Source: Haliotis cracherodii (taxonomy: Eukaryota). Taken from it: a DNA stretch of 64,000 nt. The translations under genes and the position numbers were made by a program. Position 1 is the stretch's first letter; each line of letters opens with the position of its first letter. Positions 1,482-30,263 of this stretch are shown in pieces. The stretch spans positions 24,180,001-24,244,000 of the forward strand of contig NW_027266275.1 of the NCBI RefSeq assembly GCF_022045235.1. Reading direction: 5' to 3'. The notes beneath the pieces were generated by a model. It saw only the letters and a list, made by a program, of their open reading frames with translations. It ran no database searches and was not told where the DNA came from.

Positions 1482-1992
1482 ATGGCAACTCACGAAGCCT
1501 ACCTCCGCAAATCAAGAGACACTGTTATTCCTCCAGGAAGGGATCCAGGACATCAAGACCGTCAGCGCAGAAATCATGTTCCTAGATCGTTGGGCGACTC
1601 GAAACAGTTCCATGCCTACTTCTGCCAGGATAATCTCGATTCCATTTGGACGAGAAAGCTCATTGATGAATTGGAAGGGAGTCATGGCTTTAAATGTGCC
1701 GAGTACCACAGGGACTTGGTGGTAGGAGAAAGGGTTCTAGATTTAATGACTATGTTCATTTTCACATCGGATAGAATCGTCTTCATTCTATCTGAGAATT
1801 TTCTTAAGTCGAATTATGCTATGTATCAACTTCAGCTGGCCGTGCAGTATGACATTGACCACGACACAAACAACATAGTGGCACTCCACGTGGACGAGTG
1901 TAGAGTGCCGTCAGAGCTGTTGACATTTCAGATCATTGACACAAAGTCTCGTGGGTGGAAGGACATATTCATGGACTATTTGAAGAAACCGG
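1482..1992 (+). CDS. TIR-SH3-SH3 protein, coding exon 1 (TIR domain)
   Basis: ATG at 1482 in acaATGG context. The translation has a TIR pattern (FHAYFCQD, RDLVVG, RIVFILSENFLKSNYAMYQL, VPSEL). GTAAGT donor at 1993, phase 1. Confidence 0.88.
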
Positions 1993-8523: not shown

Positions 8524-9219
8524 AGTAGCAGCCCTGTCAGCCTGACTACTGAGAGCAGTACCGACCTAGACGATCAACAGATGGAGGATACAGTGCTAGT
8601 AGGAGCTGAGGATACAGTGAATGTACAGTATTCCTGGAAGCGGGTGACCAAACCACAGGCTACATTGTTGCATGCCCTCAACATACGCGTGAAGGGGGGA
8701 TTCGTGTACGAGGCGAGAGAGTCACGGCTGACTGACAATGAGGATGAACTGAACGTTGAAGAAGGAGACGTGTTAGAAATGTTACACGATGAACCCACTC
8801 ATGGTAATATGTACAAGTGTAAAAATGCTCAAGGACATGTTGGTTTTGTGCCTAATTCGCTGATGTCGCCATCTTTCTATTTGCTCCCCTCTCAAATTGT
8901 AAAACAGTTCAAACAAACAATATCAAATTCTGAAAATGAAATGTTCAGAAAGGAACTTGAACGACTTGGAATTTCCTACTTCGTTGCCACCGGGGAAAAT
9001 CGGGGGGATGCTGTGTACTTATCTGTCAAAAGGAAGGATGTTTTGGTACAAGTAGCAACAAGAAACGCAGGTCGAGCTGTTTTCAAAAACTGTAGAAATG
9101 AAACAGGTTACCTACCCATTTCGCTCACTGAATACGTAAATGTCGAAAAACCCTACTTAGGGTTAGGAATCTCGGCTCTGTTCAACATGGGAAGGGAGAG
9201 TTTTGAATCAGAGGCGTAA
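8524..9219 (+). CDS. TIR-SH3-SH3 protein, last exon (two SH3-like domains)
   Basis: Acceptor gattcatcag, phase 0, in frame with ORF 8581-9219. SH3-1 about 8701-8871 (DELNVEEGDVLE...GHVGFVPNSL). SH3-2 about 8977-9138 (LSVKRKDVL...ETGYLPISL). The joined CDS is 1374 nt, 457 aa. Confidence 0.8.
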   Translation, partial: SSSPVSLTTESSTDLDDQQMEDTVLVGAEDTVNVQYSWKRVTKPQATLLHALNIRVKGGFVYEARESRLTDNEDELNVEEGDVLEMLHDEPTHGNMYKCKNAQGHVGFVPNSLMSPSFYLLPSQIVKQFKQTISNSENEMFRKELERLGISYFVATGENRGDAVYLSVKRKDVLVQVATRNAGRAVFKNCRNETGYLPISLTEYVNVEKPYLGLGISALFNMGRESFESEA

Positions 9220-11066: not shown

Positions 11067-12708
11067 ATGACAGACACACGCATCATCTCACACGCAGACA
11101 CCCCAGATCCTGACTTACCCACACCCGCGGAAGCGCACAACACCTCCGGGAGGACAGTCGAAAACATTGTTCCGGACGAGTATGGCTCAGACATGGAACA
11201 TACCACCCCCACCAAACCAGCCAACTCACCTCCACAATACACAAACCCCAAAAAACGTAAGCTCGACTCATCCACTCCACCACCTTCTCCCACACCCACC
11301 CCGGCTTCCTTCATCACCACCTTCGCGCTATACTTCTTCGCCGCAGGCTCAGCATCAATCCTAACTAAACAACTCTCAGCAGACAGGATAGGTTTATGGT
11401 TTAAACGCGAAAAAATCCATTACAGCAACATCAAAAAAGCAAATAAAGGTTACCAAATAATATTCCCAAATCAAGATTCATTCAATGCAGCTAAAAAAAT
11501 AGTACAAATTTTTCACGTAACCGTAACAAAACAAATTCCAAATTGGCAGCAATTCACCCGAGGGGTAATAAGAGTAAACCCTAGAGAAACAGCCGAAGAC
11601 CTAGAACTCTACACCCAAGAAGCAAACACAAATCAATACCCTCAACCCCAAATAACAAGCACCCGCAGGATAACAACAAACAGAAACGGCAAAACGGTCC
11701 CTACATCAATCGTTATTGTAAACTTCAAAAAAACGGCTAAATTTCCTGAAGCCCCTAATCACATCTCTTTCGGTGCCCACACTAAACTAGAAGTTAAACC
11801 ATACATCAAACAGGTCAAACAATGTTCTAACTGCCTTAGATATAACCACACGGCCACCCAATGTACATTCAAAAAAACTAAATGTAAAAAATGCGCCCAA
11901 ACCGATTGCCCAGGTACATGCTCTCCCTGGTGCATCCATTGCAAATGCATAAAACATACATCACTCTCAAACCAGTGTCCGCACAGACATGCCCTAACAC
12001 AACAGGCCAACAAACACATAAACATAGATTCGGCCAAAATCCAAACAAGAAAATATGCACCACCTACATCCAAACCTCTCCTCCCCACACCACACTCAAA
12101 CACCACACACAAACTCTCGGATTCAATCTGGGGCAACCACATAGAAACCGCACCCACCACTTCCACACATCACCTCACACAGCCACCTACCAACTCCCCC
12201 ATAACATCAACACCCGCATGCAAAGCAAACAGCAAAACCACAGACACACAACGACCCTCAGCCAGACACTCTACAGCCCACAAGGCAACAACACTTCCCC
12301 ACAAGCAACCACAAAAAAAAAAACTCAAACACTGAGGAAACCACAGCTACACCCAACACGCAAGCACAAACTCAACACCCCACACCACAAACACCTCCAC
12401 AGGCCTCCCCAATGAAAACTCAAACAATAAAAACCAACCTAACCGACGAAGACGAGTATTCTTCCACCGAGGAAATAAATGAAATCACTTTCTCAGCCCC
12501 TAAAACCAACAAAAACTTCAGGCGCAAAAATCCTCAATTAACCAGCACTAAAACTCTTAATAACCTCACACTACTCCTAGCCTACATGCATAAGCAAAAC
12601 TCACCAAATGCTAGTATTAAAGCTTTTCACTCAGTAGCACAAAAACTAAAACTCACAACTCTCTCCTTTGAGTTATTTCTCTCCCAACTTAGGGAAGCTA
12701 CCAATTAA
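11067..12708 (+). CDS. LINE ORF1 (gag-like), split by a +1 indel in the A11 run at 12313-12323
   Basis: CSNCLRYNHTATQC knuckle plus two further Cys clusters, and a PKKRK NLS. Removing one A joins ORF 11067-12335 to the frame ending at 12708 (about 546 aa). Confidence 0.8.
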
Positions 12709-12755
12709 ACAAAACCTAAAACTCAAAACAAACTAATAACCTCTCATCCCCCAAA

Positions 12756-15700
12756 ATGGAAGGACTAAATATATTTCAGTGGAACGCCAACGGATTAGCC
12801 TCCCACGGCAAGGAGTTAAAAGCTAAATTCAAACGAGACAAAGGTCCACACATAGTCTGTATACAGGAAACTAAATTCTCTACCAGATCTAAATTCACCC
12901 TACCAAACTATAACTCAATAAGAACTGACCGAGCCAAAACAAACCCAGGTAGAGCCGGAGGCGGCCTAATCATATACGTCAGGGAAGATTTAAGCTACAA
13001 AGAACTAAAAATAAACACACCGAACCTAGAAGCAAACGGTATCCAAATAACAAATAACAACCAAAAAATTAATATCATAAATATATACCACTGGGTAGAA
13101 AAACAGGTCAAACCTGAGGATTTAAACACCCTCCTCCAAATAGGCAATAAATCTACAATCTTCCTAGGAGACTTTAATGCCCACCACCCTACCTGGGGTA
13201 TAGAAGATAAAATAGATAAACACGGAAAACTCATCTCAGAATGGATAGAACAAAATGACCTAATACTACTAAATAACAACCAACCTACTAGATACGACAA
13301 AATACACCACAAAATGTCGGCTATCGACTTAACCATATGCACCCCAGATTTAGCCCAAAGTATTCAATGGGAAGTACACGGGGTACCACTAGGTAGTGAC
13401 CACTTCCCCATAAATATAACTATAGGAGACGTAAACATCCCATCACCAGCCCCAAACCAGGAACCTAAATTCCACTACAACAAAGCCGACTGGGACAAAT
13501 TTCAGGACATTTGCAACCAGGCTAACCTAGCTGACCTAGAAAGTAACGACCCCGAAATCTACTGTAAAAACCTCACTGACTATATAATAAACGCAGCTAA
13601 AAACTCCATTCCTTTCAAAACAACCAGCATAGGCAAACCCTCGGTTCCTTGGTGGAACGAGGAGATAGAACAAACGAGGCGTAAACGCAAATCCGCATTC
13701 AATAAAGCCAAACGTGACTTCAAACACCTAAAGATAGCACATGAACTAAATCACAAAGTACAAAGCTTAGTTAAAACAGCTAAAACAAGAGACTGGAAAA
13801 AATTTTGCGAAGAAATTAACCATCATACAGACGCCAGAACAGTTTGGCGCAAAATCCACGCCATTAGGGGCATTAAACGTCATAAAAAAACTCCCAACGT
13901 AAACAATTCAACAAACCCCACTGAAAAAGCTAATAACCTAGCAAATCACTTCTCGGCCGTCAGTAGCAATAGCAACTTCAACCAAAAATTCCAGGAACAA
14001 CTAAAAGCAGAAACCAAATTTACCAAAGAGCCAAAAGATAATAACCTAGAAATTAATCTCCATTTCACAATGGAAGAACTACTCCACGTCCTACAAAATA
14101 GGAAAAAGGGCACAGCCCCAGGCTTAGACCTTACTTCATACCAGATAATTAAACAACTACCACCCAAACTACTCCAAACTCTTCTGAAACTCTATAACCT
14201 CATATATCTAAACGGACAGGTCCCATCACCTTGGAAACAAGCCCTGGTCATACCAATCCCCAAACCCAATAAACCAGCTGACCAGGCTAATTCATACAGA
14301 CCAATCTCCCTAACTTCTAACTTATGCAAAGTAATGGAATCAATGGCCAAAAACAGGTTACAACACTACTTAGAACAAAACAACATAATAAATCCAGACC
14401 AAAGCGGTTTCACTCCTGGACGCTCAACCTTAGATAACCTCGCCCGACTAGAGCAGGACATTAAAACAGGCCAACTTAACAAACAATATACTACAGGCAT
14501 CTTTCTAGACTTCTCCAAAGCATTCGACATGGTTTGGCATAACGGGCTAATACAAAAACTTAAAAAAATAGGACTTAAAGGTCAAATAATTAACTACATC
14601 CAAAGTTTCCTAACAAACCGCAAAATCACCGTGGGCATAGACCAAACGCTATCGGACCAATGTCCCCTAGAAAATGGCACTCCCCAGGGCAGCATCCTAA
14701 GCCCAACACTCTTCAATATTATGATTAACGATTTATTCGAGGGACTATCCCCCAAAGTAAACACATCAAAATTCGCGGATGATGGAGCCCTCTGGATCCG
14801 CACTAAAAGCATTAAAATGGCCCAAAACTTACTACAAAAATCTCTAAATAAAATACAAAAATGGGCTGACAAATGGGGCTTCTCCCTAAACTCAGAAAAA
14901 ACCACAGGAATAGTATTTAAACACAAAAATATGCAACCCGCCACCCTAAACCTCCAACTAAACAACAAACCAATCAAATTCCAAAAACAAACCAAATTCT
15001 TAGGATTAATCTTCGATGAACATCTCACCTGGGATGCTCACATTAAAAACCTTGTAACCAGATGCAGCAAAGACCTAAACACGTTAAGATGCCTAACCGG
15101 CTCCAACTGGGGGGCCTCTAAAAACACCCTCCTCTCACTCTATATATCACTAATTAGGTCCAAACTAGACTATGGCAGTGCCATTTACGACACCTTAAAC
15201 AACTCTCTCATTAAAAAACTAGACTCAATCCAGTATCAGGCCCTAAAACTAATCACACGAACTCAACATGGCACCTCTTCCACCTCACTCCAGGCCTTAA
15301 CAGGAGAAATGCCACTTAAACTACGTAGGGAACAACTTACCCTAAACTTCTGGGCTGCGTCCCAATCAAACCCACTAATCGAAAACTTAATAAAACAAAA
15401 TATTAGCCCTAGAAACCAAGCCCTAGCCCGGAAACATCCACTACTTACTCCAATTTCCCAAAGAATAACCAATTACCTAAACGAACACAAAATAAATAAT
15501 CTTAAACAAAACAATAAATCATCCAATATCTTCACTCCAAAACTTAAAATACCAAAAATAGACACAACACTAGCCGATACACTAAATAAACAGACCGATC
15601 CTAACATCGCTAAAACCACCACACTAGCATACATACATGAACATTGGCCAAATTGGTGTCACATATACACAGACGGATCCTCAGATCCGATCTCAAAACA

Positions 15701-16514
15701 CACAGGTTTCGGAGTCCACATCGCACAACCAACCAAAGACACACAATCTTACCGACTCCCAAACAACCAATCCATATTCACGGCCGAACTAATGGGCATG
15801 GCCTCAGCACTACACAATCAGCAATCTAAAACACACCAAAAAATCCTCATCCTAACCGACTCTCTCAGTGGACTACAAGCCCTCAAAAATAAAAACACTA
15901 AAAACCGCCCCAAACTAATAAATCAAATACTCAATAGCTCAAACAACTTAACTAAGGTAGGTAAACAAATAGAGTTCATTTGGATCCCCGCCCACGTAGG
16001 AATCTTTGGAAATGAAAAGGCAGATAAAGCAGCAAAATTATCCCTTAAACTCCCAGAAATAAGCTTAAACTTACCCAGCTCAAAATCAGAAATCAAAAGT
16101 GTCACTAAACAAAAAATTAACAAAAAATGGCAAAATATATACCAAAACTCAAATAGCCAAATCAGGAAAGTACTCAAAAAAAACCTAAATAAACCCAAAA
16201 TACTACACCCATCCAAAAAAATCGACAGAATAATTACCAAACTACAAACAGGCCACACCAAACTAAATAATCACCGTAAAATAGCTAAACTACACACAAC
16301 AGGAAACTGCCCACATTGCAAACAACAAGAAACACCAGAACACGTACTCATTCACTGCACACACTACCAAACACACCGAACAACACTACAGACCACCCTA
16401 AATCTTAAAACCGGACTTACACTAGAATCAATCCTAAATCCACAAAATAAATTAGAAAAATTCAAAGCCTTAGGCATATACCTAATAAAAACAGGACTAA
16501 TTAGTCGCATTTAA
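12756..16514 (+). CDS. LINE ORF2 polyprotein: APE endonuclease, reverse transcriptase, RNase H, CCHC
   Basis: QWNANG/IQET/GDFNAHH/SDH (APE); PQGSILSP and FADD (RT); YTDGS, AEL, LTDS, WIPAHVGIFGNEKAD (RNase H); CPHC...EHVLIHC. Uninterrupted 1252 aa. Confidence 0.96.
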   Translation: MEGLNIFQWNANGLASHGKELKAKFKRDKGPHIVCIQETKFSTRSKFTLPNYNSIRTDRAKTNPGRAGGGLIIYVREDLSYKELKINTPNLEANGIQITNNNQKINIINIYHWVEKQVKPEDLNTLLQIGNKSTIFLGDFNAHHPTWGIEDKIDKHGKLISEWIEQNDLILLNNNQPTRYDKIHHKMSAIDLTICTPDLAQSIQWEVHGVPLGSDHFPINITIGDVNIPSPAPNQEPKFHYNKADWDKFQDICNQANLADLESNDPEIYCKNLTDYIINAAKNSIPFKTTSIGKPSVPWWNEEIEQTRRKRKSAFNKAKRDFKHLKIAHELNHKVQSLVKTAKTRDWKKFCEEINHHTDARTVWRKIHAIRGIKRHKKTPNVNNSTNPTEKANNLANHFSAVSSNSNFNQKFQEQLKAETKFTKEPKDNNLEINLHFTMEELLHVLQNRKKGTAPGLDLTSYQIIKQLPPKLLQTLLKLYNLIYLNGQVPSPWKQALVIPIPKPNKPADQANSYRPISLTSNLCKVMESMAKNRLQHYLEQNNIINPDQSGFTPGRSTLDNLARLEQDIKTGQLNKQYTTGIFLDFSKAFDMVWHNGLIQKLKKIGLKGQIINYIQSFLTNRKITVGIDQTLSDQCPLENGTPQGSILSPTLFNIMINDLFEGLSPKVNTSKFADDGALWIRTKSIKMAQNLLQKSLNKIQKWADKWGFSLNSEKTTGIVFKHKNMQPATLNLQLNNKPIKFQKQTKFLGLIFDEHLTWDAHIKNLVTRCSKDLNTLRCLTGSNWGASKNTLLSLYISLIRSKLDYGSAIYDTLNNSLIKKLDSIQYQALKLITRTQHGTSSTSLQALTGEMPLKLRREQLTLNFWAASQSNPLIENLIKQNISPRNQALARKHPLLTPISQRITNYLNEHKINNLKQNNKSSNIFTPKLKIPKIDTTLADTLNKQTDPNIAKTTTLAYIHEHWPNWCHIYTDGSSDPISKHTGFGVHIAQPTKDTQSYRLPNNQSIFTAELMGMASALHNQQSKTHQKILILTDSLSGLQALKNKNTKNRPKLINQILNSSNNLTKVGKQIEFIWIPAHVGIFGNEKADKAAKLSLKLPEISLNLPSSKSEIKSVTKQKINKKWQNIYQNSNSQIRKVLKKNLNKPKILHPSKKIDRIITKLQTGHTKLNNHRKIAKLHTTGNCPHCKQQETPEHVLIHCTHYQTHRTTLQTTLNLKTGLTLESILNPQNKLEKFKALGIYLIKTGLISRI

Positions 16515-16799: not shown

Positions 16800-17075
16800 A
16801 GTCTTGCTTGACAACGGTATAAGGATCTATACCGAAACGTCGCCTTTTACAGTATTAAAGAAGTTGTTATCCATAAAAATTGTGTCTATCTTGTAAGAAT
16901 TTATGGATAAACAACTTCTTTCTTACAATTAAGAACTACAATTATCACCAAGTACTTGCCAACCGCACTCTGTAAATCACTTGCTTGATAACAGTGTTAG
17001 AACCTACACCGAAACATTGCTCATAATTGTAATAAAGAAGTTGTTCATCCATAAATTCTTATCCTTTATTAGTAC
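16800..17075. mobile_element. Penelope-like terminal-repeat remnant (direct and inverted copies)
   Basis: The motif cttgaYaac...ccgaaac...taaagaagttgtt(c)atccataaa occurs twice (about 16807 and 16985), with an inverted partial copy at about 16896-16930. Confidence 0.5.
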
Positions 17076-17605
17076 TCCAACTTCTAAATGCCTATCAAAG
17101 ACGTTTATGGATGCTGTTTGGCCACACTATCCCTTCATATCTTGAAATGAAAACATGTTAGACCTGGATCTTGTTTGAGCAGTTAAGTATCCAAGTATTA
17201 GGCTTGTATCTACAAGTCATACTCTATCATATACCAAAAGTTAAAAATCCCGTCTAGGCTATTTGTTGAATCTTTGTTTAAGCATGTGTCCTACTTTTAA
17301 TCATGGCGGGTTGCACGGGTGGCCCAGTCGTCTAAGGCGCCGCGATTCGGCGCGCAGGGTTGCGTCCCTTGGGCACGCCAGAAACTTATGATTGTGGGTT
17401 CGAATCCCGGTTCGCCCCGATTGTGTTTCTAGGTTTGTCAGCACCATACCCGAGCTCGTGGGTTTCACCGAAGTGGTAAACGTCTGAGACCTGCATCACT
17501 TTGGACTTTCCTCTCACATTAAGCTGACACGCCGTGATATAACAGTAATACTGTTAAAAGCGGCGTTAAACCCAACTCCCTGACTCACTTTAATCATGGC
17601 TTACA

Positions 17606-17792
17606 NNNNNNNNNNNNNNNNNNNNNNNNNNNNNNNNNNNNNNNNNNNNNNNNNNNNNNNNNNNNNNNNNNNNNNNNNNNNNNNNNNNNNNNNNNNNNNN
17701 NNNNNNNNNNNNNNNNNNNNNNNNNNNNNNNNNNNNNNNNNNNNNNNNNNNNNNNNNNNNNNNNNNNNNNNNNNNNNNNNNNNNNNNNNNNN
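17606..17792. other. Assembly gap
   Basis: Run of N. Confidence 1.
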
Positions 17793-18197
17793 CAGGATTT
17801 GCCCCGCTTGTCATCATAAAAACTAAATATATAATTTTGACTTCTAAAGGAAGATTCTACAGATTAAGAACGGATTATCATTAGTATTTGTAAACAAAAT
17901 GGAAGTTACAAACATAGGGTCGGCAGAGTAGTAAATTTCCATAATTCCTTTTTTCCTTAATCCTGATTTATGACAATAAGCAAATATTTTTTAAGTTGTA
18001 AATAAAAAACGACAAAACCCCTTCAAAAAGCAGAGTCGACAGTACGATTACATAAATAATGAACACGTGTTTTTGAGTCATTATCAAATGATGATGGTCT
18101 CCTGCCGCACCGATGACACCCGTCACAAACACATGCAAAGGCAAGAATTGTTTACTTGTAAAAGACAGTGTATGCAGAGCTGCAGATTAGCTGCGTA

Positions 18198-18328
18198 NNN
18201 NNNNNNNNNNNNNNNNNNNNNNNNNNNNNNNNNNNNNNNNNNNNNNNNNNNNNNNNNNNNNNNNNNNNNNNNNNNNNNNNNNNNNNNNNNNNNNNNNNNN
18301 NNNNNNNNNNNNNNNNNNNNNNNNNNNN
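18198..18328. other. Assembly gap
   Basis: Run of N. Confidence 1.
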
Positions 18329-18839
18329 AAAGGAGCTAATTTCCTAAACAAAATTACGAGATAATTTACTTTCCTAGTCAAGCCTATATATTTGGAACAG
18401 TTATATACAGCTAGAACATTATTTATTTGTTTTTAAATCTTAAAATGTTCACGCTTTTTAAAAAAAAACACAAAAAAACAACCAATAGAGTGATGAATAG
18501 ATGGGTGAACAAATTTTGGTTACCCAATGAAAAATGTAACAAACCAATTAAAATAGAAACCCTAGAGTAAAAACTCAATTGCTCAAAAAGTTATCTGGAG
18601 CTCTGGTATGGTACAAGTCAAAATAGGGATTGGATCGGACATTAGTTTTGTCACTTTTGCGTCGAATTAGGAAATGGGTACCATGAAACCTTTTCAAAGC
18701 TTTCCCGAGGCCTTACATGTTTGACACCTCTTTGAAACCCATCGCTAGTCGCCTCTGAAAGTCGATCCTTGGTGAAAGTATGATAAAGTAAACAGGGAGT
18801 TCAAAGTTTCAACCTGAAGGTTAGTCATATATCCACGAA

Positions 18840-19011
18840 GGGGCGGTCGGGTAGCCTAGTGGTTAAAGCGTTTGCTCGTCACGCCGAAGACCCGGGTTCG
18901 ATTCCCGACATGGGTACAATGTGTGAAGCCCATTTCTGGTGTCCCCCGCCGTGATATTGCTTGAATATTGCTAAAAGCGGCGTAAAACCAAACTCACTCA
19001 CTCACTCACTC
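18840..19011 (+). mobile_element. SINE family A (tRNA-Asp-like head, (ACTC)n tail)
   Basis: A/B boxes and TSD catawatccacga. Other copies: about 1-143(-), 438-618(+), 3557-3728(-), 5923-6090(-), 40173-40286(-), 48893-49054(+). Confidence 0.88.
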
Positions 19012-19140
19012 ATAAATCCACGATATGAATCCATACTATCCAAAACATTGAATGTAAAGCCCCTTGGACTGTGATTAGATTATTTCATGTTTATAAATAC
19101 ATGCTCAAGTGTACGGTATATAGTTATAATCACTTCCCCA

Positions 19141-19159
19141 GCACTGGGAGATGTAGTCC
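19141..19159 (-). promoter_or_regulatory. ZNF143/Staf-type promoter motif upstream of the caspase gene
   Basis: The reverse strand reads GGACTACATCTCCCAGTGC, matching ACTAYRnnnCCCR. Confidence 0.45.
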
Positions 19160-19293
19160 TATTCCGACTGTTCAAGACCTCCATCATTGATGCTTTAGCC
19201 AGGTGGTATTTTGTTCATGAGTAGATAAATTGTGGTAATTTGAGTATAAAAACCCCAATTGATAATGTTTATTACTGAATCTCAAATCCGTGT

Positions 19294-19372
19294 ATGGATG
19301 GATGGATGGGTGGGTGGGTGGGTGGGTGGATGAATGGATGGATGGATGGATGCATCTATCCATCCATCCATT
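19294..19372. repeat. (GGAT)n/(GGGT)n microsatellite with an inverted (ATCC)n arm
   Basis: Seen directly. Confidence 0.85.
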
Positions 19373-19525
19373 TGGGTGGGGAAGGCGGCAAAAATAATGA
19401 TACTCTTAGGATGATATTCTGTGAATAGTAATGATGCAAATATCAATGAATTGACCATGTGTTCGCCTTGCCAAGAACTATCTGACCCTTATTTTGTAGG
19501 TCCAAGGAGAGGTTGTGTGATCCTG

Positions 19526-20833
19526 ATGGCCGAAGGTAGAAGGGTTGTGTCCCTGCATGTTCTCGGATCTAAAGGATCGGGCAAATCTCTCTTCATACGA
19601 CAGCTGGCTAATACAAGACACTGCAAGAAGCTCAAACTTGGTAAGAGGTGTTATGTTGTTGAACTGGATCTGGAGACACTTATTGGAGTTCCAGTTCTTG
19701 TAAACATCACGGAGTACAGAGGTGTGAAGTCCAATGGAGCTCTTGCCTTTGCGTACCATAAGGCAGATGCGTGTTTACTGTTCTATGACAGAGAGGAAGC
19801 TGCTAGCTTTGATAGAGCACAAATGGGATATATCTGGTGTCATTATTTCATGATAGGGAATCCAAATACTTTTGTTGTGGGAAACAAATGTGATAGGTTA
19901 GACAGGAACGACGTTCGACTGGAGGCTGTAGATGCATTCATCAACAAGTTCGGACCAGTTAAGGGCCACTTTTCTGTATCAGCTGAAACTGGCTGCAATA
20001 TCAAACCGATGTTGGTTGATGTTCTTCAACAAGTTTTGGAAGAACGTTTTGTAATCAACAGTAGCCCAGCACAGCTAGAAGTGGCCCTTCGGAATAGTGA
20101 TCCCCACTCGGGAGTGCAAATCTATGCAGTTGAAGAAACAGCTGGTTTGTGTGTTATTGTTAACAACGACACTTTTGAAAACTTGCCGTATCGAGACGGG
20201 GCTGTTAAGGACGTAGAGAACATCGAATCCACATTTGGACCACTTGGATTTGATATGAGGTACATTGAGAACAAAGATGTTTCATCACTCATCAGGAGAA
20301 TGCACGATATATCTAAAATGGATCATACAATGAACAGTATGTTTGTCTGTTTCATCATGTCTCATGGATCACGCAACAGTATTCTGGGAGTAGACGGCCT
20401 GACAATCGACCTTGACAGACTAACATCGTTGTTTTCTGCCCAGCAGTGTCCTAGTCTAGCGGGGAAGCCCAAGCTGTTCATAATTCAGGCATGTCAGGGT
20501 TCCATGGTCCAATCACCAGCAAACGCTCATTCAGACTCTGCAGCAATTCCCGAAGTCACTCGAGAGAGACCAACTGTGCCGGAGTTCGGAGACCTTTTAA
20601 TAGCACATTCTACTATTACAGGATTTGTTGCGTATCGTTACCCCGACAGAGGTTCTCCGTTTATATCGACGCTGTGCAACAAAATTCAGAACTTTCCTGA
20701 GAATCACATGGTGGATATTCTGACCATGGTTAACGGGGAGGTTGCTGCTATGAACTTTGGAGGGTCATTTAAACAGATGCCAATGTTCCAGTCACGGCTT
20801 CGAAAGCGCCTGTACCTGAAGAGGTTGTCATGA
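19526..20833 (+). CDS. Ras/Rab-like GTPase domain fused to a caspase-8-like protease (435 aa from ATG 19526)
   Basis: P-loop GSKGSGKS (19565-19588), G4 VVGNKCD, G5 SVSAETG. Caspase GLCVIVNN, SHG (His 20363), GKPKLFIIQACQG (Cys 20492), p10 DLLIAHST...KQMP. Acceptor ttattttgtag at 19499 precedes the ATG. Confidence 0.92.
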   Translation: MAEGRRVVSLHVLGSKGSGKSLFIRQLANTRHCKKLKLGKRCYVVELDLETLIGVPVLVNITEYRGVKSNGALAFAYHKADACLLFYDREEAASFDRAQMGYIWCHYFMIGNPNTFVVGNKCDRLDRNDVRLEAVDAFINKFGPVKGHFSVSAETGCNIKPMLVDVLQQVLEERFVINSSPAQLEVALRNSDPHSGVQIYAVEETAGLCVIVNNDTFENLPYRDGAVKDVENIESTFGPLGFDMRYIENKDVSSLIRRMHDISKMDHTMNSMFVCFIMSHGSRNSILGVDGLTIDLDRLTSLFSAQQCPSLAGKPKLFIIQACQGSMVQSPANAHSDSAAIPEVTRERPTVPEFGDLLIAHSTITGFVAYRYPDRGSPFISTLCNKIQNFPENHMVDILTMVNGEVAAMNFGGSFKQMPMFQSRLRKRLYLKRLS

Positions 20834-23394
20834 GATGTGGCAATGATGATATTGGAAATATATTGCCAAGGCAACAGACACCCATGAATGTCTGTAATAT
20901 GTGAATGATGAAACTTGGTGTGTAGTTGGATACGTGTGTTGTCAAGGGAACATGAAACAATGGCTGAATGTAATCTATGGATAGTGTCCCGCACTTCAGA
21001 CACCGCGAAGAAACATGTACAGTGACAAAAAACACAGGCAGTTATGAGATAAATGTCCAGTTATACGTTTAGTTACTGACACAGGACTTTACAAGAATAC
21101 ATTCAACAGTCAACCGAATACATTTACAAAGATATATATATTTGTATCATGACTGCCTCTATTATTATAAAATCCTGAAATAATAAGGGACATTTGTGTC
21201 CCGCCATTTCCATTCACGACTGCATACTCATAGCGCACCATGAAAACACACTTAAACAGAGAAGTATGCATAAGCTTATCAGATGTGTTTTCAGAGCAGC
21301 TTTAAATGTAGTTAGACATGGAACATCATCTTTGTATGTTCAGAAACTTATTGGTCAGGGATATAGTTGTGCATGAGTAATGTCATTTATCAAACTGCTT
21401 TGAACTTGATATAATTCATGCTTTCAAGTGGAATATTTGCGTAGTTGCTCTTAGTGAGTGACCAGTTAATCTACATCATTAAGTTGATGCACTTAAGCTA
21501 TGCTTGAACAGAAATTGTAAAAGCCAGAAAGATTACTAATAATACTTTGGTTCTGAATAAAAATCACTTTGACGGGTAATATTCTGAACGTATAAACCCA
21601 TATGTTATATCGATATGCCTGGCCCGGTACAAGGATAAGCAGTTTCGGACCCACGGCTCGCTGAAAAGATCAAATCATTATCCCCGCCTCGAGTCTATTA
21701 CAGCTCCCCATAGCATAAAGTACCCCCAACCCCAACCACCCCACCCACCCCACCCCCACATTATTTTACTATTTCATTATTTTGAGGCTTCACACATACT
21801 GTTGGAGGCCAGAAGGGTTCTACTAAAATGTGGAATGTAACACATGTAAACTTTGCTGCCCACCTTAAGTGCAGGTATGAACCTGGGACACTGAGTGCTA
21901 TACTACTGTTGGATTGCTATACATGTTGCAAATCATACAGTGAAAACAGTAGACATATCTTAATTGCTGTCTCACAATTTATATTTTGACATTAAACTGT
22001 ATATATGATAATTGTTTGCCTATGTTTGTTTGTTAGTTTGTTGTTTAACGCCGCACTATTCCAGCTGGATCTATATGACGGCGGTATGTAAGTAATCGTG
22101 TCTTGACCAGACAATCCAGTGTTTGACATCATGAGCATCGATCCATCAATTGGGATACGATGACATGCATCAACCAAGTCAGCCAGCCTGACAACCCGAT
22201 CTCGTTAGTCGGATCTGTGAAGTCTACTCCTCCGACATCAGCATGGATGTCAACTGTGACAGCAGATGAATGAAATGATATTTCACTTTGCAATAAGTAA
22301 AATTACATGGATCAAGGGTCGTAGCTCTGTAAAAAAGTAATTGATGGGACTAAACTTCGACAGACGGAAAGACGGACGGACGGACGGACGAACACTTCGT
22401 GACGGGGGATAATAATGATGACAACAGTGTTAAACACCATTCACTCTTGGACACGAGACGTATTACCATTGGAAACTGTTTTCACGAGGGACAAGTGATC
22501 GTCTGTATGAGACAATCATTCTGAAAGGGATAACTTTTCACGTCAGTGTGGAATGACACGCCATCAAGTCCAAGATTTAGTCCACTACGACAAGCATGAT
22601 ATACAGGGGGGCCTATTCTAAACTGGCCTTCAAAAGGGTTGTTAAAGTGAAAAAAGACTGCACAATCCTGGTGCAGTAAAATCAAAGAGAAAGATTGCGC
22701 CGTATTCAGAATAACGATACAACAGAGATATAGGACAGTCAAGTGTATGTCTGGAAGTGTGGTCGATAGATACATTTGGGATATTTAATTTATCATAACG
22801 TAAGTTACCTCCATATTTGATACCACGATAACGATACCACTTGCATTTAAACAGCATAATAGGGTTAAATACGGGCACAAAGATCATATCCGGTACAAAG
22901 GGCATGTCTTGAAATCCAGTGTTTACCCAACTGGCATGAACATCAGCGAACAGAATCTGGCGACTTACAGTCTCTAGCCTTTGACAGGTGAGGTGAGGTA
23001 AGTGAAGTCAACCGTCAGCGAGCCTGACCAACCGACCCCCTTAGTCGCCTCTTACTGCAATCATGGGTTGCTGAAGACAGGATCTTCACGGGCGGTGTGT
23101 TAATGACAGAGTGGATCTCCGCACCGAACTGAGTAGCTGAGTATGCTTAATGCATACCAACTTACACAATGATGAAAGCAAACGTGGCTGAGAAAGGGAC
23201 ACTAATGTTATTTTCCGACATCATAACACAGAAATTCAGCTTCATGAACGATGGCTTCAAGGCAGACATCCTTCATTCATGTAAGAGTATAAACAGACTA
23301 GATTATCTACCGAAAGAGATTCCATTTAGCGCAAACGGGCAAAGTAGCTGTGCAAATTATGTGAATGGACCACTGAAAATCAGAGATGACACCA

Positions 23395-27858: not shown

Positions 27859-28386
27859 CTAACACGAAAACTTAATATTTGATGTTGTTGAATTATCAAT
27901 TACGAATCTCCCAGCGTTAGGTGTAGCAATACATCGCCCGCTTACAGACAAATTAGCAAATAGCCAATCGGACACATAGCCGTTGGGTTTATAACCTGAT
28001 ATTTCATTCATGAGCTGGCCACTACTTGGCTGTGAACCAACCGACACATCTATAAATCGTACATTGGATGAAGTTCCATTGATCCCTGCCGGCATGGTCC
28101 AGAAAACAAAACGAGGACAAAAACCTTCAAGACGAATGTTTTGAAACACCACATTATTCATGTTGATGACCTTGACGTTTCCAGCCAGATCGAACACTGC
28201 ATTGTTTCTACTAAGCATACCACAGTCGCGGTCGTGGAATGTACACCAGTCCGTGTGAATGACGTCGATGTTGCTGATGCTGACTCTGTGAAGGTCACGT
28301 TCCGTCCACCAGCCTGTTTGGAATACGGCACCATTTTGCATTTGCCAGATGACCACTCTCTGTATCGTCATATCGTTGTTGTACAC
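27859..28386 (-). CDS. GH49-like hydrolase A, exon 2
   Basis: Acceptor ttttccttatag, then VYNNDM...VVIWQMQNGAVFQTGWW...IDVIHTDW. The joined protein is 477 aa. Confidence 0.88.
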   Translation of the reverse strand: MYNNDMTIQRVVIWQMQNGAVFQTGWWTERDLHRVSISNIDVIHTDWCTFHDRDCGMLSRNNAVFDLAGNVKVINMNNVVFQNIRLEGFCPRFVFWTMPAGINGTSSNVRFIDVSVGSQPSSGQLMNEISGYKPNGYVSDWLFANLSVSGRCIATPNAGRFVIDNSTTSNIKFSC

Positions 28387-29357
28387 CTATAAGGAAAACT
28401 AACATTCAAAAAGTCGTTCAAGATATTCAAGGAACCATCGAGCAAGACTGGAATCTCTGAGTAAAAGGTGACTTAGCGACATATGACTCTTGCTTAGAAG
28501 TTGTTTGATCACCTTTACAACATTCAAGGATTCAGTAAAGCTTTCAAAAATGTTTATGGAGGACATTTCCAAATTTGACGCATCAGTGACAAAAATGATG
28601 TCCGATGCAGTTCCCTGTTTTGACTTGTTCCATAATGTTCCCGTGTTTTTCAGGTGAACATCGACTTGCCCGTGCATGTGTTTGTGACGGGTGCCGCAGG
28701 ATACGCTCACATTTTCGCGAACACCTGGTATCATTACTATTTGATAGTGATTCATAAACACATGCTCAGGATATAATGTGAATCGTACAATCGACTCTGT
28801 TTTATGCAGAGATTTCTATTGGATATGGAAAGGGTTGTGTTGCTTTATTTATATGTGCAATGGATAACTAAGTGTACGATGGTTTTGAGTGAGGTCAAAC
28901 TAATCCTAAGAAACCTATTCTTGATTATAGTTAGATTATAATGTTTTTTTTGTTTTTTTTATTGTTTGTTTGTTGTTCAACGCCGCACTTAGCCGCACCG
29001 ACGGCGGTCTGTAAATAATCGAGTCTGAATCAGACTATCCAGTGATTGACATCATGCCCATCAATCCACGCATTTGGGATACGATGACACTCATCAACAA
29101 AGTCAGCGAGTCTGACCACCCGTTCCCGTTTGTCCCCTCTTACGACAAGCATAGTCACCTTTTACAGCAAGCATGGGTTGCTGAAGACCTATTCTACCCA
29201 GATTGTAATGTTTGTAGGGGCTATAGTAATGTTTAATCTGTAGCGCTATTAACGAAGCTAAAACATAAATAATACAGATGGAATTGATGAATTGATAATT
29301 TATATGCTATCATATCTGAAACACACAGAGTTGTTAGATGTTAAAGTCTGGCATTAC

Positions 29358-30263
29358 CTTGAGTGAGTCGTCATTGGCCATAATGAACACGTCCTCCACC
29401 AAACCACCAACGCCCATCTCAATACCGTCAGTATTGTAAGGCCAGGCGCCCACCATCTTGACCTGTTTAATGATGTTGTTGGGACTTTGGGCGAATATGA
29501 AAAACTGTTGGGGATCACTTAACGTTATGCCTTCAATTGTGTGATTAGTGCCTTGTGCAGTGTTGATCAACGACCACTGAAATCGCTTGTCATGAAATTT
29601 GTACTTGCGGCCTGAACAGATCCCTCTTCCATGGAACTTGACCTTTGTGTTATCTGTGGTGATGAACCCTCCATCAACGAAAGCTCCAGCACTGATGTAA
29701 ACCTCTTTTATACTCGAGTTCAATCTGACTTGACCGTCAAGATAATGCACACCGACGTCAAAGAACATTACCGAGGGGTCACTCTTAGAAGGAACGTCTC
29801 TCTCCAAAGGTTCTGCAAAGATCAGCAGCTTGTCGACTATGTCGGACTTCCAACTGCCGTAGTCATTATCAAACTCTACAGACATCATAGTAGAATTCCG
29901 AGTCACTGTAAACCTAGCCGTCTTGTTCCCCACCCTACTGCAGGCGTACCCGTAACTTACCGGGCGAACCAGACACTGACTGAAGTCCTTCTGTGTCCTG
30001 ACCTCAACGATTACCGGACCACGACTGAATGCAAAAGACGACCATGACACGGAGCGGTTGGGATGGACGTAGTGGTTCTCGATATGTCTGTGGTTCGAGG
30101 TCGTCTTGTAAGTGAAGGTACCCAATAATGGATCCCCGAGACCTACCAATACCTCATACTTATCTGATGACTCCATGGTCGGAGGTGCAGGGTATATGAC
30201 CAGCTCGGCCATATATCCGCCCATCATTGTCATTACTAGGTAGATGACTGGACACACATCCAT
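29358..30263 (-). CDS. Secreted GH49-like glycoside hydrolase A, exon 1
   Basis: Hydrophobic N-terminus, then VYISAGAFVDGG, GRGICSG, WPYNTDG, FIMANDDSLK. Donor AAG|GTAATG, phase 0. Confidence 0.88.

What the first reader, a model, noticed from the sequence alone, without database searches (positions are those of the whole stretch)
19526..20833. Small-GTPase domain fused directly to an intact caspase-8-like protease
Seen: one uninterrupted frame carries a Ras/Rab-like fold (G1 GSKGSGKS, ADACLLFYD, G4 NKCD, G5 SAETG) followed by a complete caspase. The caspase has the His/Cys dyad, QACQG, both S1 arginines (YRDG, AYRY) and a candidate inter-subunit site AHSD/S. Established: QACQG typifies caspase-8/10, which are normally recruited through DED prodomains. 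No DED, CARD or DD is visible here, and the GTPase domain occupies the prodomain position. Inference: this is an initiator caspase with a new activation input, either nucleotide state, GTPase dimerisation or membrane recruitment. I know of no described protein with this architecture, but I could not search.
Basis: partly seen in the sequence, partly recalled or inferred. Interest (0 to 1): 0.92.

Follow-up and report, generated by a model that had tools for sequence, protein, structure and literature searches.

The report
Abalone caspase with Rab-like GTPase prodomain
A black-abalone gene really does encode a cell-death protease (caspase) whose usual recruitment domain is replaced by a divergent Rab-like GTP-binding domain; it is transcribed and conserved in several abalone species, is already in RefSeq as "caspase-3-like", has never been studied, and offers a testable case of a caspase with an unconventional activation input.

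Summary
Window 19526-20833 (+) is one uninterrupted 435-codon frame. Residues 12-171 match Pfam Ras (38.7 bits, cut-off 21.6). Residues 207-430 match Peptidase_C14 (E 1.6e-49). AlphaFold models give a complete Ras-type fold whose best solved neighbours are Rabs, then a disordered linker, then a caspase fold.

Transcriptome-like contigs from three species labels start exactly at a splice acceptor at 19500. They bridge the domain junction and end just after an AATAAA at 21556.

The genome is Haliotis cracherodii. Same-architecture proteins, all named "caspase-3-like", occur in H. rufescens, H. rubra and H. asinina. They form three old subfamilies that are about 30% identical to each other. No search found the fusion outside Haliotis.

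- "Caspase-8-like" is not established. The tree backbone is unresolved, PDB best hits are caspase-3/7, and the pentapeptide varies (QACQG or QACRG) within the family.
- The G domain keeps G1, G4 and G5. It lacks the switch-I Thr and the catalytic Gln, and has ExxG in place of DxxG. A classical GTP/GDP switch is therefore doubtful.
- A ROC-prodomain caspase was reported in an annelid in 2024, so the idea has a precedent.

Most likely the G domain is a nucleotide-stabilised recruitment prodomain. This is a new variant of a known kind, of moderate interest.

The parts
19486..19499 (+). Polypyrimidine tract and AG splice acceptor (…CCCTTATTTTGTAG|G); the intron ends at 19499
   Evidence: Sequence. 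Contigs X1 record 4 and X4 record 28 begin to match exactly at 19500, with 22 and 28 unmatched 5' letters. Depth is zero at 19208-19391.
19500..19525 (+). Start of the coding exon: a 26-nt leader without an in-frame stop. It is 5'UTR in the RefSeq-type model, or possibly coding if an upstream phase-1 exon is joined
   Evidence: Position 19500 is the second base of a codon in the ORF's frame.
19526..20833 (+). CDS of the 435-aa Rab-like-GTPase-caspase fusion protein (stop at 20831-20833)
   Evidence: It is identical to database protein P0001 (435 aa). The H. rufescens ortholog XP_046339242.2 is 96-99% identical.
19541..20038 (+). Rab-like G domain (residues 6-171)
   Evidence: Pfam Ras 12-171. 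PDB phmmer best hits are Rab2B, Rab5-type and Ypt7. AF2 fold and Foldseek Rab hits.
19565..19588 (+). G1 P-loop GSKGSGKS (residues 14-21), canonical GxxxxGK[ST]
   Evidence: G14, G19, K20 and S21 are invariant across the three subfamilies.
19622..19648 (+). Switch-I region (residues 33-41, CKKLKLGKR) lacking the conserved Thr. Four of the listed between-species non-synonymous differences fall at residues 29-40
19712..19726 (+). G3/switch II: E63-Y-R-G66-V67 in place of D-T-A-G-Q. Asp is replaced by Glu and the catalytic Gln by Val
   Evidence: HMMER alignment to Rab2B. N60, E63 and G66 are conserved in all subfamilies.
19883..19894 (+). G4 NKCD (residues 120-123), the guanine-specificity motif
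19979..19987 (+). G5 SAE (residues 152-154; SAK in canonical Rabs)
20039..20140 (+). Inter-domain linker (residues 172-205), predicted disordered and the fastest-evolving part. It contains Asp191 (NSD|P), a weak candidate prodomain-removal site
   Evidence: pLDDT is below 50 at residues 178-192. Linker identity to the H. rubra copies is 35-40%, against 58-67% in the domains.
20141..20830 (+). Caspase catalytic domain (p20+p10; residues 206-435)
   Evidence: Pfam Peptidase_C14 207-430, E 1.6e-49. Caspase-3 in PDB at E 2.5e-37. pLDDT is above 90 over most of it.
20363..20365 (+). Catalytic His280 (SHG)
20486..20500 (+). Active-site pentapeptide QACQG (Gln321, Cys323)
20525..20539 (+). AHSD337|S: the inter-subunit cleavage candidate in the disordered L2 loop. 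Asp337 is invariant in all fusion proteins (ETD in subfamilies B and C) and aligns with caspase-3 Asp175
   Evidence: (pLDDT below 50 at residues 327-349).
20834..21586 (+). 3' UTR, with the AATAAA poly(A) signal at 21556-21561. Contig coverage ends at 21575-21586

Best explanation
What it is. This is a genuine, transcribed Haliotis cracherodii gene, carried in RefSeq as 'caspase-3-like'. Its whole coding sequence lies in one exon. It encodes a catalytically complete caspase whose prodomain is a divergent Rab-like G domain instead of a DED or CARD. It is one of three old subfamilies (A, B and C) of such fusions in abalones.

Shown:
- the architecture, the fold and the transcription across the junction
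- conservation with purifying selection
- intact caspase catalytic and S1 residues, and an invariant inter-subunit Asp337
- intact G1, G4 and G5
- loss of the switch-I Thr and the catalytic Gln, and ExxG in place of DxxG

Inferred mechanism:
1. The G domain binds guanine nucleotide, but as a slow or non-hydrolysing module that is largely locked in one state.
2. It acts as the recruitment prodomain, docking the zymogen onto a partner or membrane. Subfamily B adds an MGxxxS myristoylation-type N-terminus.
3. Local crowding there lets the caspase domains dimerise and cut the L2 loop at Asp337.
4. The flexible linker leaves the protease free of the G domain.

A role in innate immunity or stress-induced cell death is likely. 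The family is lineage-specific, its G domain and loops diverge faster than the caspase core, and it sits among expanded intronless caspase paralogs. That role is not shown.

Confidence is about 0.95 for identity and architecture, and about 0.35 for the recruitment/proximity mechanism.
For: - ORF and motifs.
- Pfam Ras plus Peptidase_C14, with no death-fold domain.
- Caspase-3 alignment showing His, Cys, Gln, both Arg and Asp175 equivalents.
- Same architecture in H. rubra, H. asinina, H. rufescens and H. cracherodii.
- Paralogs in the same genome: subfamily C is a single 444-aa ORF and subfamily B is at least 2 exons.
- RNA-type contigs start at acceptor 19500. X2 (20002-20642) and X3 (19966-21242) bridge the junction. 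Coverage ends after the AATAAA.
- Synonymous changes exceed non-synonymous ones: 13/5 and 8/4 over 295 S and 1010 N sites, so omega is about 0.1-0.17. There is also an in-frame 9-nt deletion in X4.
- The positions invariant across subfamilies are the nucleotide-binding residues: G14, G19, K20, S21, N120, D123, S152.
- Rab-like fold.
- Both domains are better conserved than the linker.
- Subfamily B has the N-terminus MGGKPSR.
Against: - No biochemical data exist. Nucleotide binding is inferred from motifs only.
- Loss of the switch-I Thr, together with the Asp-to-Glu change, could weaken Mg2+/GTP binding.
- Subfamily B has a P-loop one residue short (GDSVGKS) and NRAD instead of NKxD.
- The window protein (subfamily A) has no lipidation motif.
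- The caspase's L2 linker is short and caspase-3-like, and PDB best hits are effector caspases. That fits an effector cut by an upstream caspase as well as it fits self-activation.
- The G-domain homodimer prediction gave no verdict.
- The upstream exon joined at 19500 was not identified, so the true N-terminus could be longer.
- The fusion was found only in Haliotis, but the searches that could see other molluscs were limited by word filters or by the very divergent query.
Confidence: 0.55

Rival explanations
1. It is an effector-type caspase. The protein would be a constitutive dimer like caspase-3/7, activated when an upstream initiator cuts Asp337. The G domain would be a bulky localising or inhibitory prodomain that is clipped off in the linker, not an activation platform.
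For: - Best solved relatives are caspase-3 (E 2.5e-37) and caspase-7.
- The L2 loop is only 4 residues longer than that of caspase-3.
- Asp337 aligns with the IETD175 site that initiators cut.
- Subfamilies B and C carry a classical (L/H)ETD at this site.
- An Asp lies 9-14 residues before the conserved Tyr200 in all subfamilies, where caspase-3 removes its prodomain (the position of the caspase-3 site is from my own knowledge).
- RefSeq names all members 'caspase-3-like'.
Against: - A folded prodomain of about 170 residues whose nucleotide-binding residues are selectively conserved is untypical of effectors, which have short prodomains.
- The tree does not place the fusions inside the effector clade.
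- In the window protein the linker Asp191 is followed by Pro, a poor P1' residue for caspases (own knowledge).
- In the profile search, the best non-fusion matches outside Haliotis are DED caspases.
Confidence: 0.28
2. The N-terminal domain is a pseudo-GTPase that no longer binds nucleotide. It would serve only as a protein-protein scaffold, or as a decoy surface.
For: - The switch-I Thr is absent, DxxG is ExxG, and the catalytic Gln is replaced by V, P or D in subfamilies A, B and C.
- Subfamily B has a shortened P-loop and NRAD.
- The Pfam Ras score is low for a small GTPase: 38.7 bits, against more than 120 for canonical Rabs.
- An exhaustive HMMER search finds canonical GTPases only at E of 5e-8 or weaker.
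Against: - Between subfamilies that share only about 25% identity in this domain, the invariant positions are exactly the P-loop Gly/Lys/Ser, the NKxD Asn/Asp and the G5 Ser. That pattern is expected only if nucleotide contacts are still selected.
- Subfamilies A and C keep a full-length GxxxxGKS.
Confidence: 0.15
3. The 435-aa protein is only part of the product. The exon at 19500 would be spliced to the TIR exon at 1482-1992, giving a TIR-GTPase-caspase, so the real activation input would be TIR-TIR assembly.
For: - Contigs show that the exon is spliced at 19500, and there is no in-frame stop between 19500 and the ATG.
- The TIR exon (Pfam TIR_2, E 3e-10) starts with an ATG at 1482. It ends with a consensus GTAAGT donor after 1992 in phase 1, which matches the phase needed at 19500.
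- TIR-prodomain caspases are reported in an annelid (PMC11463336).
Against: - The two exons are 17.5 kb apart, with an SH3-like ORF and a full LINE between them.
- No protein of this cluster in the database carries a TIR. The models for H. cracherodii, H. rufescens and H. rubra all start at or 3 codons before this Met.
- Depth similar to that of the coding exon at 17920-18103 in all four runs suggests a nearby non-coding leader exon instead.
- Subfamilies B and C have their own N-termini inside the same exon.
Confidence: 0.1
4. It is an annotation or assembly artefact, or a decaying pseudogene with no function.
For: A tandem copy of subfamily C (L002) is broken by a 7-nt deletion at codon 151. 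Many intronless caspase-like paralogs in this genome have lost the catalytic Cys.
Against: - The frame is uninterrupted.
- The ortholog in another species is 96-99% identical.
- There is a large synonymous excess.
- Spliced transcripts occur in four runs.
- All catalytic residues are intact.
Confidence: 0.02

Closest known systems
Effector caspases-3/7 (Peptidase C14A)
   Same: It is the best sequence match among solved structures (E 2.5e-37). It shares the His/Cys dyad, Gln283, the Arg179 and Arg341 equivalents, the inter-subunit Asp at the IETD position, and a similar L2 length.
   Different: It has a folded Rab-like prodomain of about 170 residues plus a 30-residue linker, where caspase-3/7 have a short peptide. 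The pentapeptide is QACQG rather than QACRG. It is not placed in the effector clade with support.
DED initiator caspases-8/10
   Same: It has QACQG. Mollusc and bird DED caspases are the best non-Haliotis matches in the profile search. A placement with them is not rejected (AU p 0.288). It has a long N-terminal folded domain, as an initiator would.
   Different: It has no DED. The L2 linker is shorter. The mollusc DED clade (97/94 support) excludes the fusions in the best tree. A sister subfamily carries QACRG.
ROC-prodomain caspase of the annelid Owenia fusiformis, and other lophotrochozoan caspases with unusual prodomains (ANK, kinase, TIR, Z-binding, PARP): PMC11463336
   Same: A Ras-superfamily G domain stands in the prodomain position of a lophotrochozoan caspase. 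The gene duplications are lineage-specific.
   Different: The annelid case is a single predicted protein, lies in the CARD-type 'caspase-Y' group, and the authors say it could be a prediction artefact. The abalone domain is Rab-like: Pfam Roc scores below its cut-off in subfamily A (15.9 against 27). It lies in one exon with the caspase, is bridged by transcripts, and forms a three-subfamily family in at least four species. Homology between the two was not testable here.
Rab small GTPases
   Same: It has the fold and topology, G1 GxxxxGKS, G4 NKxD and G5 SA(K/E). Best PDB sequence and structure matches are Rab2, Rab5-type, Ypt7, RabA1a, Rab28 and Rab8.
   Different: It has no switch-I Thr and no catalytic Gln, carries ExxG in place of DxxG, and has no C-terminal Cys prenylation motif. 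The C-terminus continues into a caspase. Sequence identity is only 18-24%.
ROCO proteins and DAPK (Roc-COR coupled to an effector domain in cell-death signalling)
   Same: The concept is shared: a Ras-like G domain is covalently linked to a death-related enzymatic output.
   Different: There is no COR domain, and the Roc model is below threshold in the window protein. The output is a protease, not a kinase.

Membership tests
Caspase (MEROPS C14A / Pfam PF00656) | Significant match to the Peptidase_C14 profile over p20 and p10 | tested here: met
   E 1.6e-49, 169 bits against a cut-off of 21.4, profile positions 2-233 of 233.
Caspase (MEROPS C14A / Pfam PF00656) | Catalytic His-Cys dyad (SHG … QACxG) and an S1 pocket of Arg, Gln and Arg | tested here: met
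   His280, Cys323, Gln321, Arg223 and Arg371 align with caspase-3 His121, Cys163, Gln161, Arg64 and Arg207.
Caspase (MEROPS C14A / Pfam PF00656) | Asp cleavage site in the inter-subunit loop | tested here: met
   Asp337 is invariant in 10 fusion proteins, aligns with caspase-3 Asp175, and lies in a loop with pLDDT below 50. Actual cleavage was not tested.
Caspase (MEROPS C14A / Pfam PF00656) | Asp-directed proteolytic activity | not testable with these tools
   This needs recombinant enzyme and peptide substrates.
Caspase-8/10 (DED initiator caspases) | Tandem DED prodomain | tested here: not met
   There is no PF01335 hit at E up to 1. The N-terminus is a Ras-family domain.
Caspase-8/10 (DED initiator caspases) | Phylogenetic placement of the catalytic domain within the DED-caspase clade | tested here: inconclusive
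   The best tree leaves subfamily A on an open backbone, outside the supported mollusc DED clade. Forcing it in costs 6.8 lnL, AU p 0.288.
Caspase-8/10 (DED initiator caspases) | QACQG pentapeptide | tested here: met
   It is present but not diagnostic. Subfamily C of the same fusion family has QACRG, and the non-fusion paralog L005 has QACQG.
Ras superfamily small GTPase (Rab-like) | Match to the Ras-family profile and a Ras-type alpha/beta fold | tested here: met
   Pfam Ras scores 38.7 bits against a cut-off of 21.6. The AF2 model has 6 strands and 5 helices in canonical order, pTM 0.83. Foldseek Rab hits have probability 1.00.
Ras superfamily small GTPase (Rab-like) | G1 GxxxxGK[ST], G4 NKxD and G5 SAx nucleotide-binding motifs | tested here: met
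   GSKGSGKS, NKCD and SAE are present, and these residues are invariant across the subfamilies.
Ras superfamily small GTPase (Rab-like) | G2 switch-I Thr, and G3 DxxGQ with the catalytic Gln | tested here: not met
   Lys37 or Gly39 stands in the Thr position. E63-Y-R-G66-V67 replaces D-T-A-G-Q.
Ras superfamily small GTPase (Rab-like) | C-terminal prenylation motif (CC/CxC/CAAX) after a hypervariable tail | tested here: not met
   The G domain is followed by a linker and the caspase. The protein ends …LKRLS.
Ras superfamily small GTPase (Rab-like) | Guanine-nucleotide binding and hydrolysis | not testable with these tools
   This needs a biochemical assay.
ROCO (Roc-COR) proteins | Roc domain followed by a COR domain | tested here: not met
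   Roc scores 15.9 bits against a cut-off of 27 in the window protein, and there is no COR hit. Subfamily B reaches 32.6 bits for Roc, also without COR.

The most novel reading that the evidence does not exclude
The Rab-like prodomain is an integrated decoy or guard surface. Many intracellular pathogens covalently modify or bind host Rab switch regions. A hydrolysis-dead Rab mimic wired directly to a caspase could turn such an attack, or a change in nucleotide state, into immediate protease activation and cell death. It would be an animal counterpart of plant NLR integrated decoys and of pyrin guarding Rho.

Two observations are consistent with this but do not show it. The listed between-species amino-acid changes in the G domain cluster at residues 29-40, around switch I. 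The family is lineage-specific and fast-evolving, with broken and duplicated copies.
Probability: 0.1. Interest if true: 0.9.

Novelty: new variant of a known kind. Interest (0 to 1): 0.55.

Why it matters
Caspases are normally switched on through death-fold prodomains (DED, CARD) on adaptor platforms. A conserved, expressed family in which a nucleotide-binding Rab-like domain holds that position would give a directly testable example of a different input to a cell-death protease. It would also add molluscs to the lophotrochozoan groups that have re-tooled caspase prodomains.

This case is cleaner than the published single-gene predictions. Both domains lie in one exon, transcripts bridge the junction, and there are three subfamilies in at least four species. 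A chimeric gene model cannot explain that.

Abalones suffer mass mortalities from bacterial and viral disease, so lineage-specific death or immune effectors are also of applied interest. The gene itself is already annotated; what is new is the recognition and dissection of the architecture.

Tried and rejected
- **Breadth outside Haliotis.**
  - Word-indexed searches used the full protein, the subfamily-B G domain and a 10-sequence family profile. They returned fusions only from Haliotis.
  - An exhaustive HMMER search with the G domain against 1.8 billion representatives found one close relative (H. rubra) and a subfamily-C fragment. All else was ordinary Ras/Rab at E of 5e-8 or weaker.
  - The ten longest such hits are multi-Ras or EF-hand-Ras proteins, and none has a caspase.
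  - Both ESM Atlas look-ups gave nothing usable.
  - These blanks do not prove absence in other gastropods.
- **Orthologous DNA.** I used the partial list of contig differences from read laying instead.
- **G-domain homodimer.** The prediction gave no verdict: score 0.00, controls not run. It counts neither for nor against dimerisation.
- **N-terminus of the nearest non-fusion paralog.** I tested whether the N-terminal 140 residues of L005/P0009 are a decayed G domain. hhalign probability was 4.8%, so I rejected this.
- **Single origin from the caspase tree.** This could not be shown. The subfamilies are not joined with support, and a single clade is merely not rejected. The shared N-x-x-E-x-x-G and H148 features, and the reciprocal best hits between subfamilies A and C, favour one origin. 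Subfamily B scores better against canonical GTPases than against A or C.
- **Upstream exon.** The exon spliced to 19500 was not identified. The single read-laying run did not print those loose ends. The N runs at 17606-17792 and 18198-18328 were left as they are.
- **Literature.** Four full-text searches found no paper on a Ras/Rab-caspase in abalone.
Full report
**1. Observation**

Window 19526-20833 (+) is a single open frame of 435 codons. The frame is open from 19421, and the first plausible ATG is at 19526. Pfam finds Ras at residues 12-171 (E 1e-9 for the domain alone; 38.7 bits against a gathering score of 21.6). It finds Peptidase_C14 at residues 207-430 (E 1.6e-49). There is no DED, CARD or Death domain; NACHT and other P-loop hits are sub-threshold noise on the P-loop.

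The alignment to human caspase-3 (E 2.5e-37) matches these residues:
- His280, Cys323 and Gln321 to the catalytic residues
- Arg223 and Arg371 to the S1 residues
- Asp337 (AHSD|S) to the IETD175|S inter-subunit site

**2. Fold**

AlphaFold2 on a 75-sequence alignment gives mean pLDDT 83.4. The model has:
- a G-domain fold at residues 6-171
- a disordered linker at 178-192
- a caspase fold at 207-435
- a disordered L2 loop at 327-349

The G domain modelled alone has pLDDT 86.2 and pTM 0.83, with the canonical order of six strands and five helices. Foldseek against the PDB returns at least 500 hits. The top ones are Rabs (RabA1a, Rab28, Rab10, Rab8, Rab2, Rab7) at probability 1.00 and TM 0.65-0.8. 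By sequence the best solved relatives are Rab2B (7e-7), a plant Rab5-type protein and Ypt7. The N-terminal half is therefore a real Rab-like G domain.

**3. Organism and gene model**

Paralogous loci in the same assembly encode proteins identical to RefSeq XP_071113381.1 and XP_071108634.1 of Haliotis cracherodii. The genome is therefore black abalone. The window protein is in the public protein collection as a 435-aa model. Its H. rufescens ortholog (XP_046339242.2, 'caspase-3-like') is 96% identical in the G domain, 95% in the linker and 99% in the caspase domain.

I laid Logan contigs of four runs (three species labels) on 17000-22500. Their sizes are those of transcriptomes. The results were:
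- Coverage runs only from 19500 to about 21586, and is zero at 19208-19391.
- Two contigs begin to match exactly at 19500, with 22 and 28 foreign 5' letters. Position 19500 lies just after …TTATTTTGTAG, so it is a used splice acceptor.
- Contigs X2 (20002-20642) and X3 (19966-21242) run straight through the domain junction.

Coverage ends 15-25 nt after an AATAAA at 21556-21561. The fusion is therefore transcribed as one unit, and in these assemblies it is not spliced apart.

The exon that donates to 19500 was not identified. Depth like that of the coding exon at 17920-18103 in all four runs hints at a nearby leader exon. The N runs at 17606-17792 and 18198-18328 were left untouched.

**4. Selection**

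The contig differences that the tool listed are a partial list. For one related species they are 13 synonymous to 5 non-synonymous, and for another 8 to 4. The CDS has 295 synonymous and 1010 non-synonymous sites, so omega is roughly 0.1-0.17. One species has an in-frame 9-nt deletion.

The non-synonymous changes fall at residues 29-40 (around switch I), 201 and 203 (linker), and 346 and 348 (L2 loop). None falls in the folded caspase core. Against the two H. rubra copies the domains keep 58-67% identity, while the linker keeps 35-40%.

**5. A family, not a one-off**

In this genome the G domain finds three further loci:
- a 444-aa single-ORF fusion on contig 23 (subfamily C; P-loop GPSESGKS, NKLD, QACRG)
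- its tandem neighbour, broken by a 7-nt deletion at codon 151
- a subfamily-B gene on contig 13, with an intron inside the caspase domain

Subfamily B proteins start MGGKPSR, which fits the MGxxxS/T myristoylation consensus (my own knowledge). They have a P-loop one residue short and NRAD in G4.

Subfamilies A, B and C are about 30% identical to one another, and each is conserved between species. Across all ten proteins, the invariant G-domain positions are G14, G19, K20 and S21 (G1), N60, E63 and G66 (G3 region), D81, Y87, D88, G119, N120 and D123 (G4), and H148, S152, G156 and N158 (G5 region). In domains otherwise about 25% identical, this pattern is what continued selection on nucleotide contacts would produce.

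Relative to canonical Rabs, all three subfamilies share the following:
- ExxG in place of DxxG
- no catalytic Gln (V, P or D in its place)
- in subfamilies A and C, no switch-I Thr

The shared derived G3 motif, and the reciprocal best hits between A and C, favour one ancestral fusion. Subfamily B is more canonical, and its link to the others is weaker.

**6. Which kind of caspase?**

I built a maximum-likelihood tree of 43 caspase domains under LG+C20.
- It recovers each subfamily at 100% support but leaves them on an open backbone.
- Subfamily B is sister to a non-fusion 376-aa abalone paralog (92/94).
- The mollusc DED-caspase clade (97/94) contains several intronless abalone pseudo-caspases but none of the fusions.
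- AU tests reject neither 'all fusions plus that paralog form one clade' (p 0.205) nor 'subfamily A belongs with the DED caspases' (p 0.288).

PDB best hits are caspase-3/7. Profile-search best hits outside the genus are DED caspases. The L2 loop is only four residues longer than that of caspase-3. QACQG is not diagnostic, since subfamily C has QACRG. 'Caspase-8-like initiator' is thus unproven, and so is RefSeq's 'caspase-3-like'.

**7. Breadth and precedent**

All sequence searches that could see other animals returned the fusion only from Haliotis: cracherodii, rufescens, rubra and asinina. The Atlas look-ups were blank. These searches are limited, so absence elsewhere is not shown.

In the literature library I found no description of the abalone proteins. 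A 2024 survey of lophotrochozoan caspases (PMC11463336) reports unusual prodomains: ANK, kinase, TIR, Z-binding, PARP, and a ROC domain in one Owenia fusiformis caspase. Its authors caution that some may be chimeric predictions. The abalone family is a better-documented case of the same general phenomenon, with a different (Rab-like) G domain.

**8. Mechanism**

Shown: a competent-looking caspase zymogen is tethered by a flexible linker to a G domain that retains its nucleotide-binding elements but lacks the hydrolysis and switch residues.

Inferred, at about 0.35: the G domain is a largely locked, nucleotide-stabilised docking module. It concentrates the zymogen on a partner or membrane. Proximity then drives dimerisation and cleavage at Asp337.

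The main rival, at about 0.28, is an effector caspase activated by upstream cleavage, with the G domain as a localising or inhibitory prodomain. Lesser rivals are:
- a nucleotide-free pseudo-GTPase scaffold (0.15)
- a longer TIR-G-caspase isoform (0.1)

The TIR idea rests on splice phases. The TIR exon at 1482-1992 ends in phase 1 at a GTAAGT donor, which fits the acceptor at 19500. No database model has such a protein, however. The homodimer prediction for the G domain gave no verdict.

**9. Verdict**

This is a new variant of a known kind (lophotrochozoan caspases with non-death-fold prodomains). It is already annotated but uncharacterised. Interest is moderate (0.55).

Noticed in passing
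window 1482-1992 (+): A TIR-domain exon (Pfam TIR_2, E 3e-10) that starts with an ATG. It ends at a consensus GTAAGT donor in phase 1, the phase needed to read into the exon that starts at 19500. This is either a separate TIR gene or an alternative first exon.
   Followed up: partly
window 11067-16514 (+): A full-length LINE-type retrotransposon: a 422-aa ORF without a Pfam hit, followed by a 1252-aa ORF with endonuclease, reverse transcriptase and RNase H. It lies between the TIR exon and the caspase gene.
   Followed up: partly
window 8581-9219 (+): A 212-aa ORF with a variant SH3 domain (SH3_2, E 2e-6). Which gene it belongs to is unknown.
   Followed up: no
window 27859-30263 (-): Two ORFs with weak matches to the glycosyl hydrolase family 49 N-terminal domain (E 1e-6) and the isopullulanase beta-solenoid repeat. 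As far as I know this enzyme type is mainly bacterial and fungal, so it is odd in an abalone chromosome.
   Followed up: no
window 19296-19372: A (GGAT)n/(GGGT)n microsatellite followed by its inverted complement (CCAT)n, about 130 nt upstream of the splice acceptor. Reads appear cut there in read laying.
   Followed up: no
L002 (G000:C23:30922745-30926119): A tandem duplicate of the subfamily-C GTPase-caspase gene, 74% identical in DNA to its intact neighbour L003. It is broken by a 7-nt deletion at codon 151 and has a stop near the caspase C-terminus. Its 159-aa G-domain fragment is annotated as a protein on its own (P0088).
   Followed up: yes
L006-L013 (G000 contigs C45, C1, C56): At least six intronless caspase-like ORFs have the catalytic Cys (and often the His) replaced: QASRG, QADRG, IPCGQG (three copies in tandem), IPYGSG and QGAQG. 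This is an expanded set of pseudo-caspases that groups with mollusc DED caspases in the tree. The C56 copies have a 205-222-aa upstream ORF of unknown type.
   Followed up: partly
L005 (G000:C23:20320527-20324716): A single-exon 376-aa active caspase (QACQG) with an unassigned 140-residue N-terminal domain. It is sister to subfamily B in the tree. Its N-terminus shows no detectable similarity to the G domain (hhalign probability 4.8%).
   Followed up: yes
L004 / P0008 (subfamily B): An N-terminal MGGKPSR motif (myristoylation-type), conserved in H. cracherodii, rufescens, rubra and asinina. It occurs together with a P-loop one residue short (GDSVGKS) and NRAD.
   Followed up: partly
window 17606-17792 and 18198-18328: Runs of N (masked or gaps) flank the only unique stretch upstream of the gene (17793-18197). 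That stretch has transcript-like depth in all four runs. The N runs were not filled or looked up.
   Followed up: no
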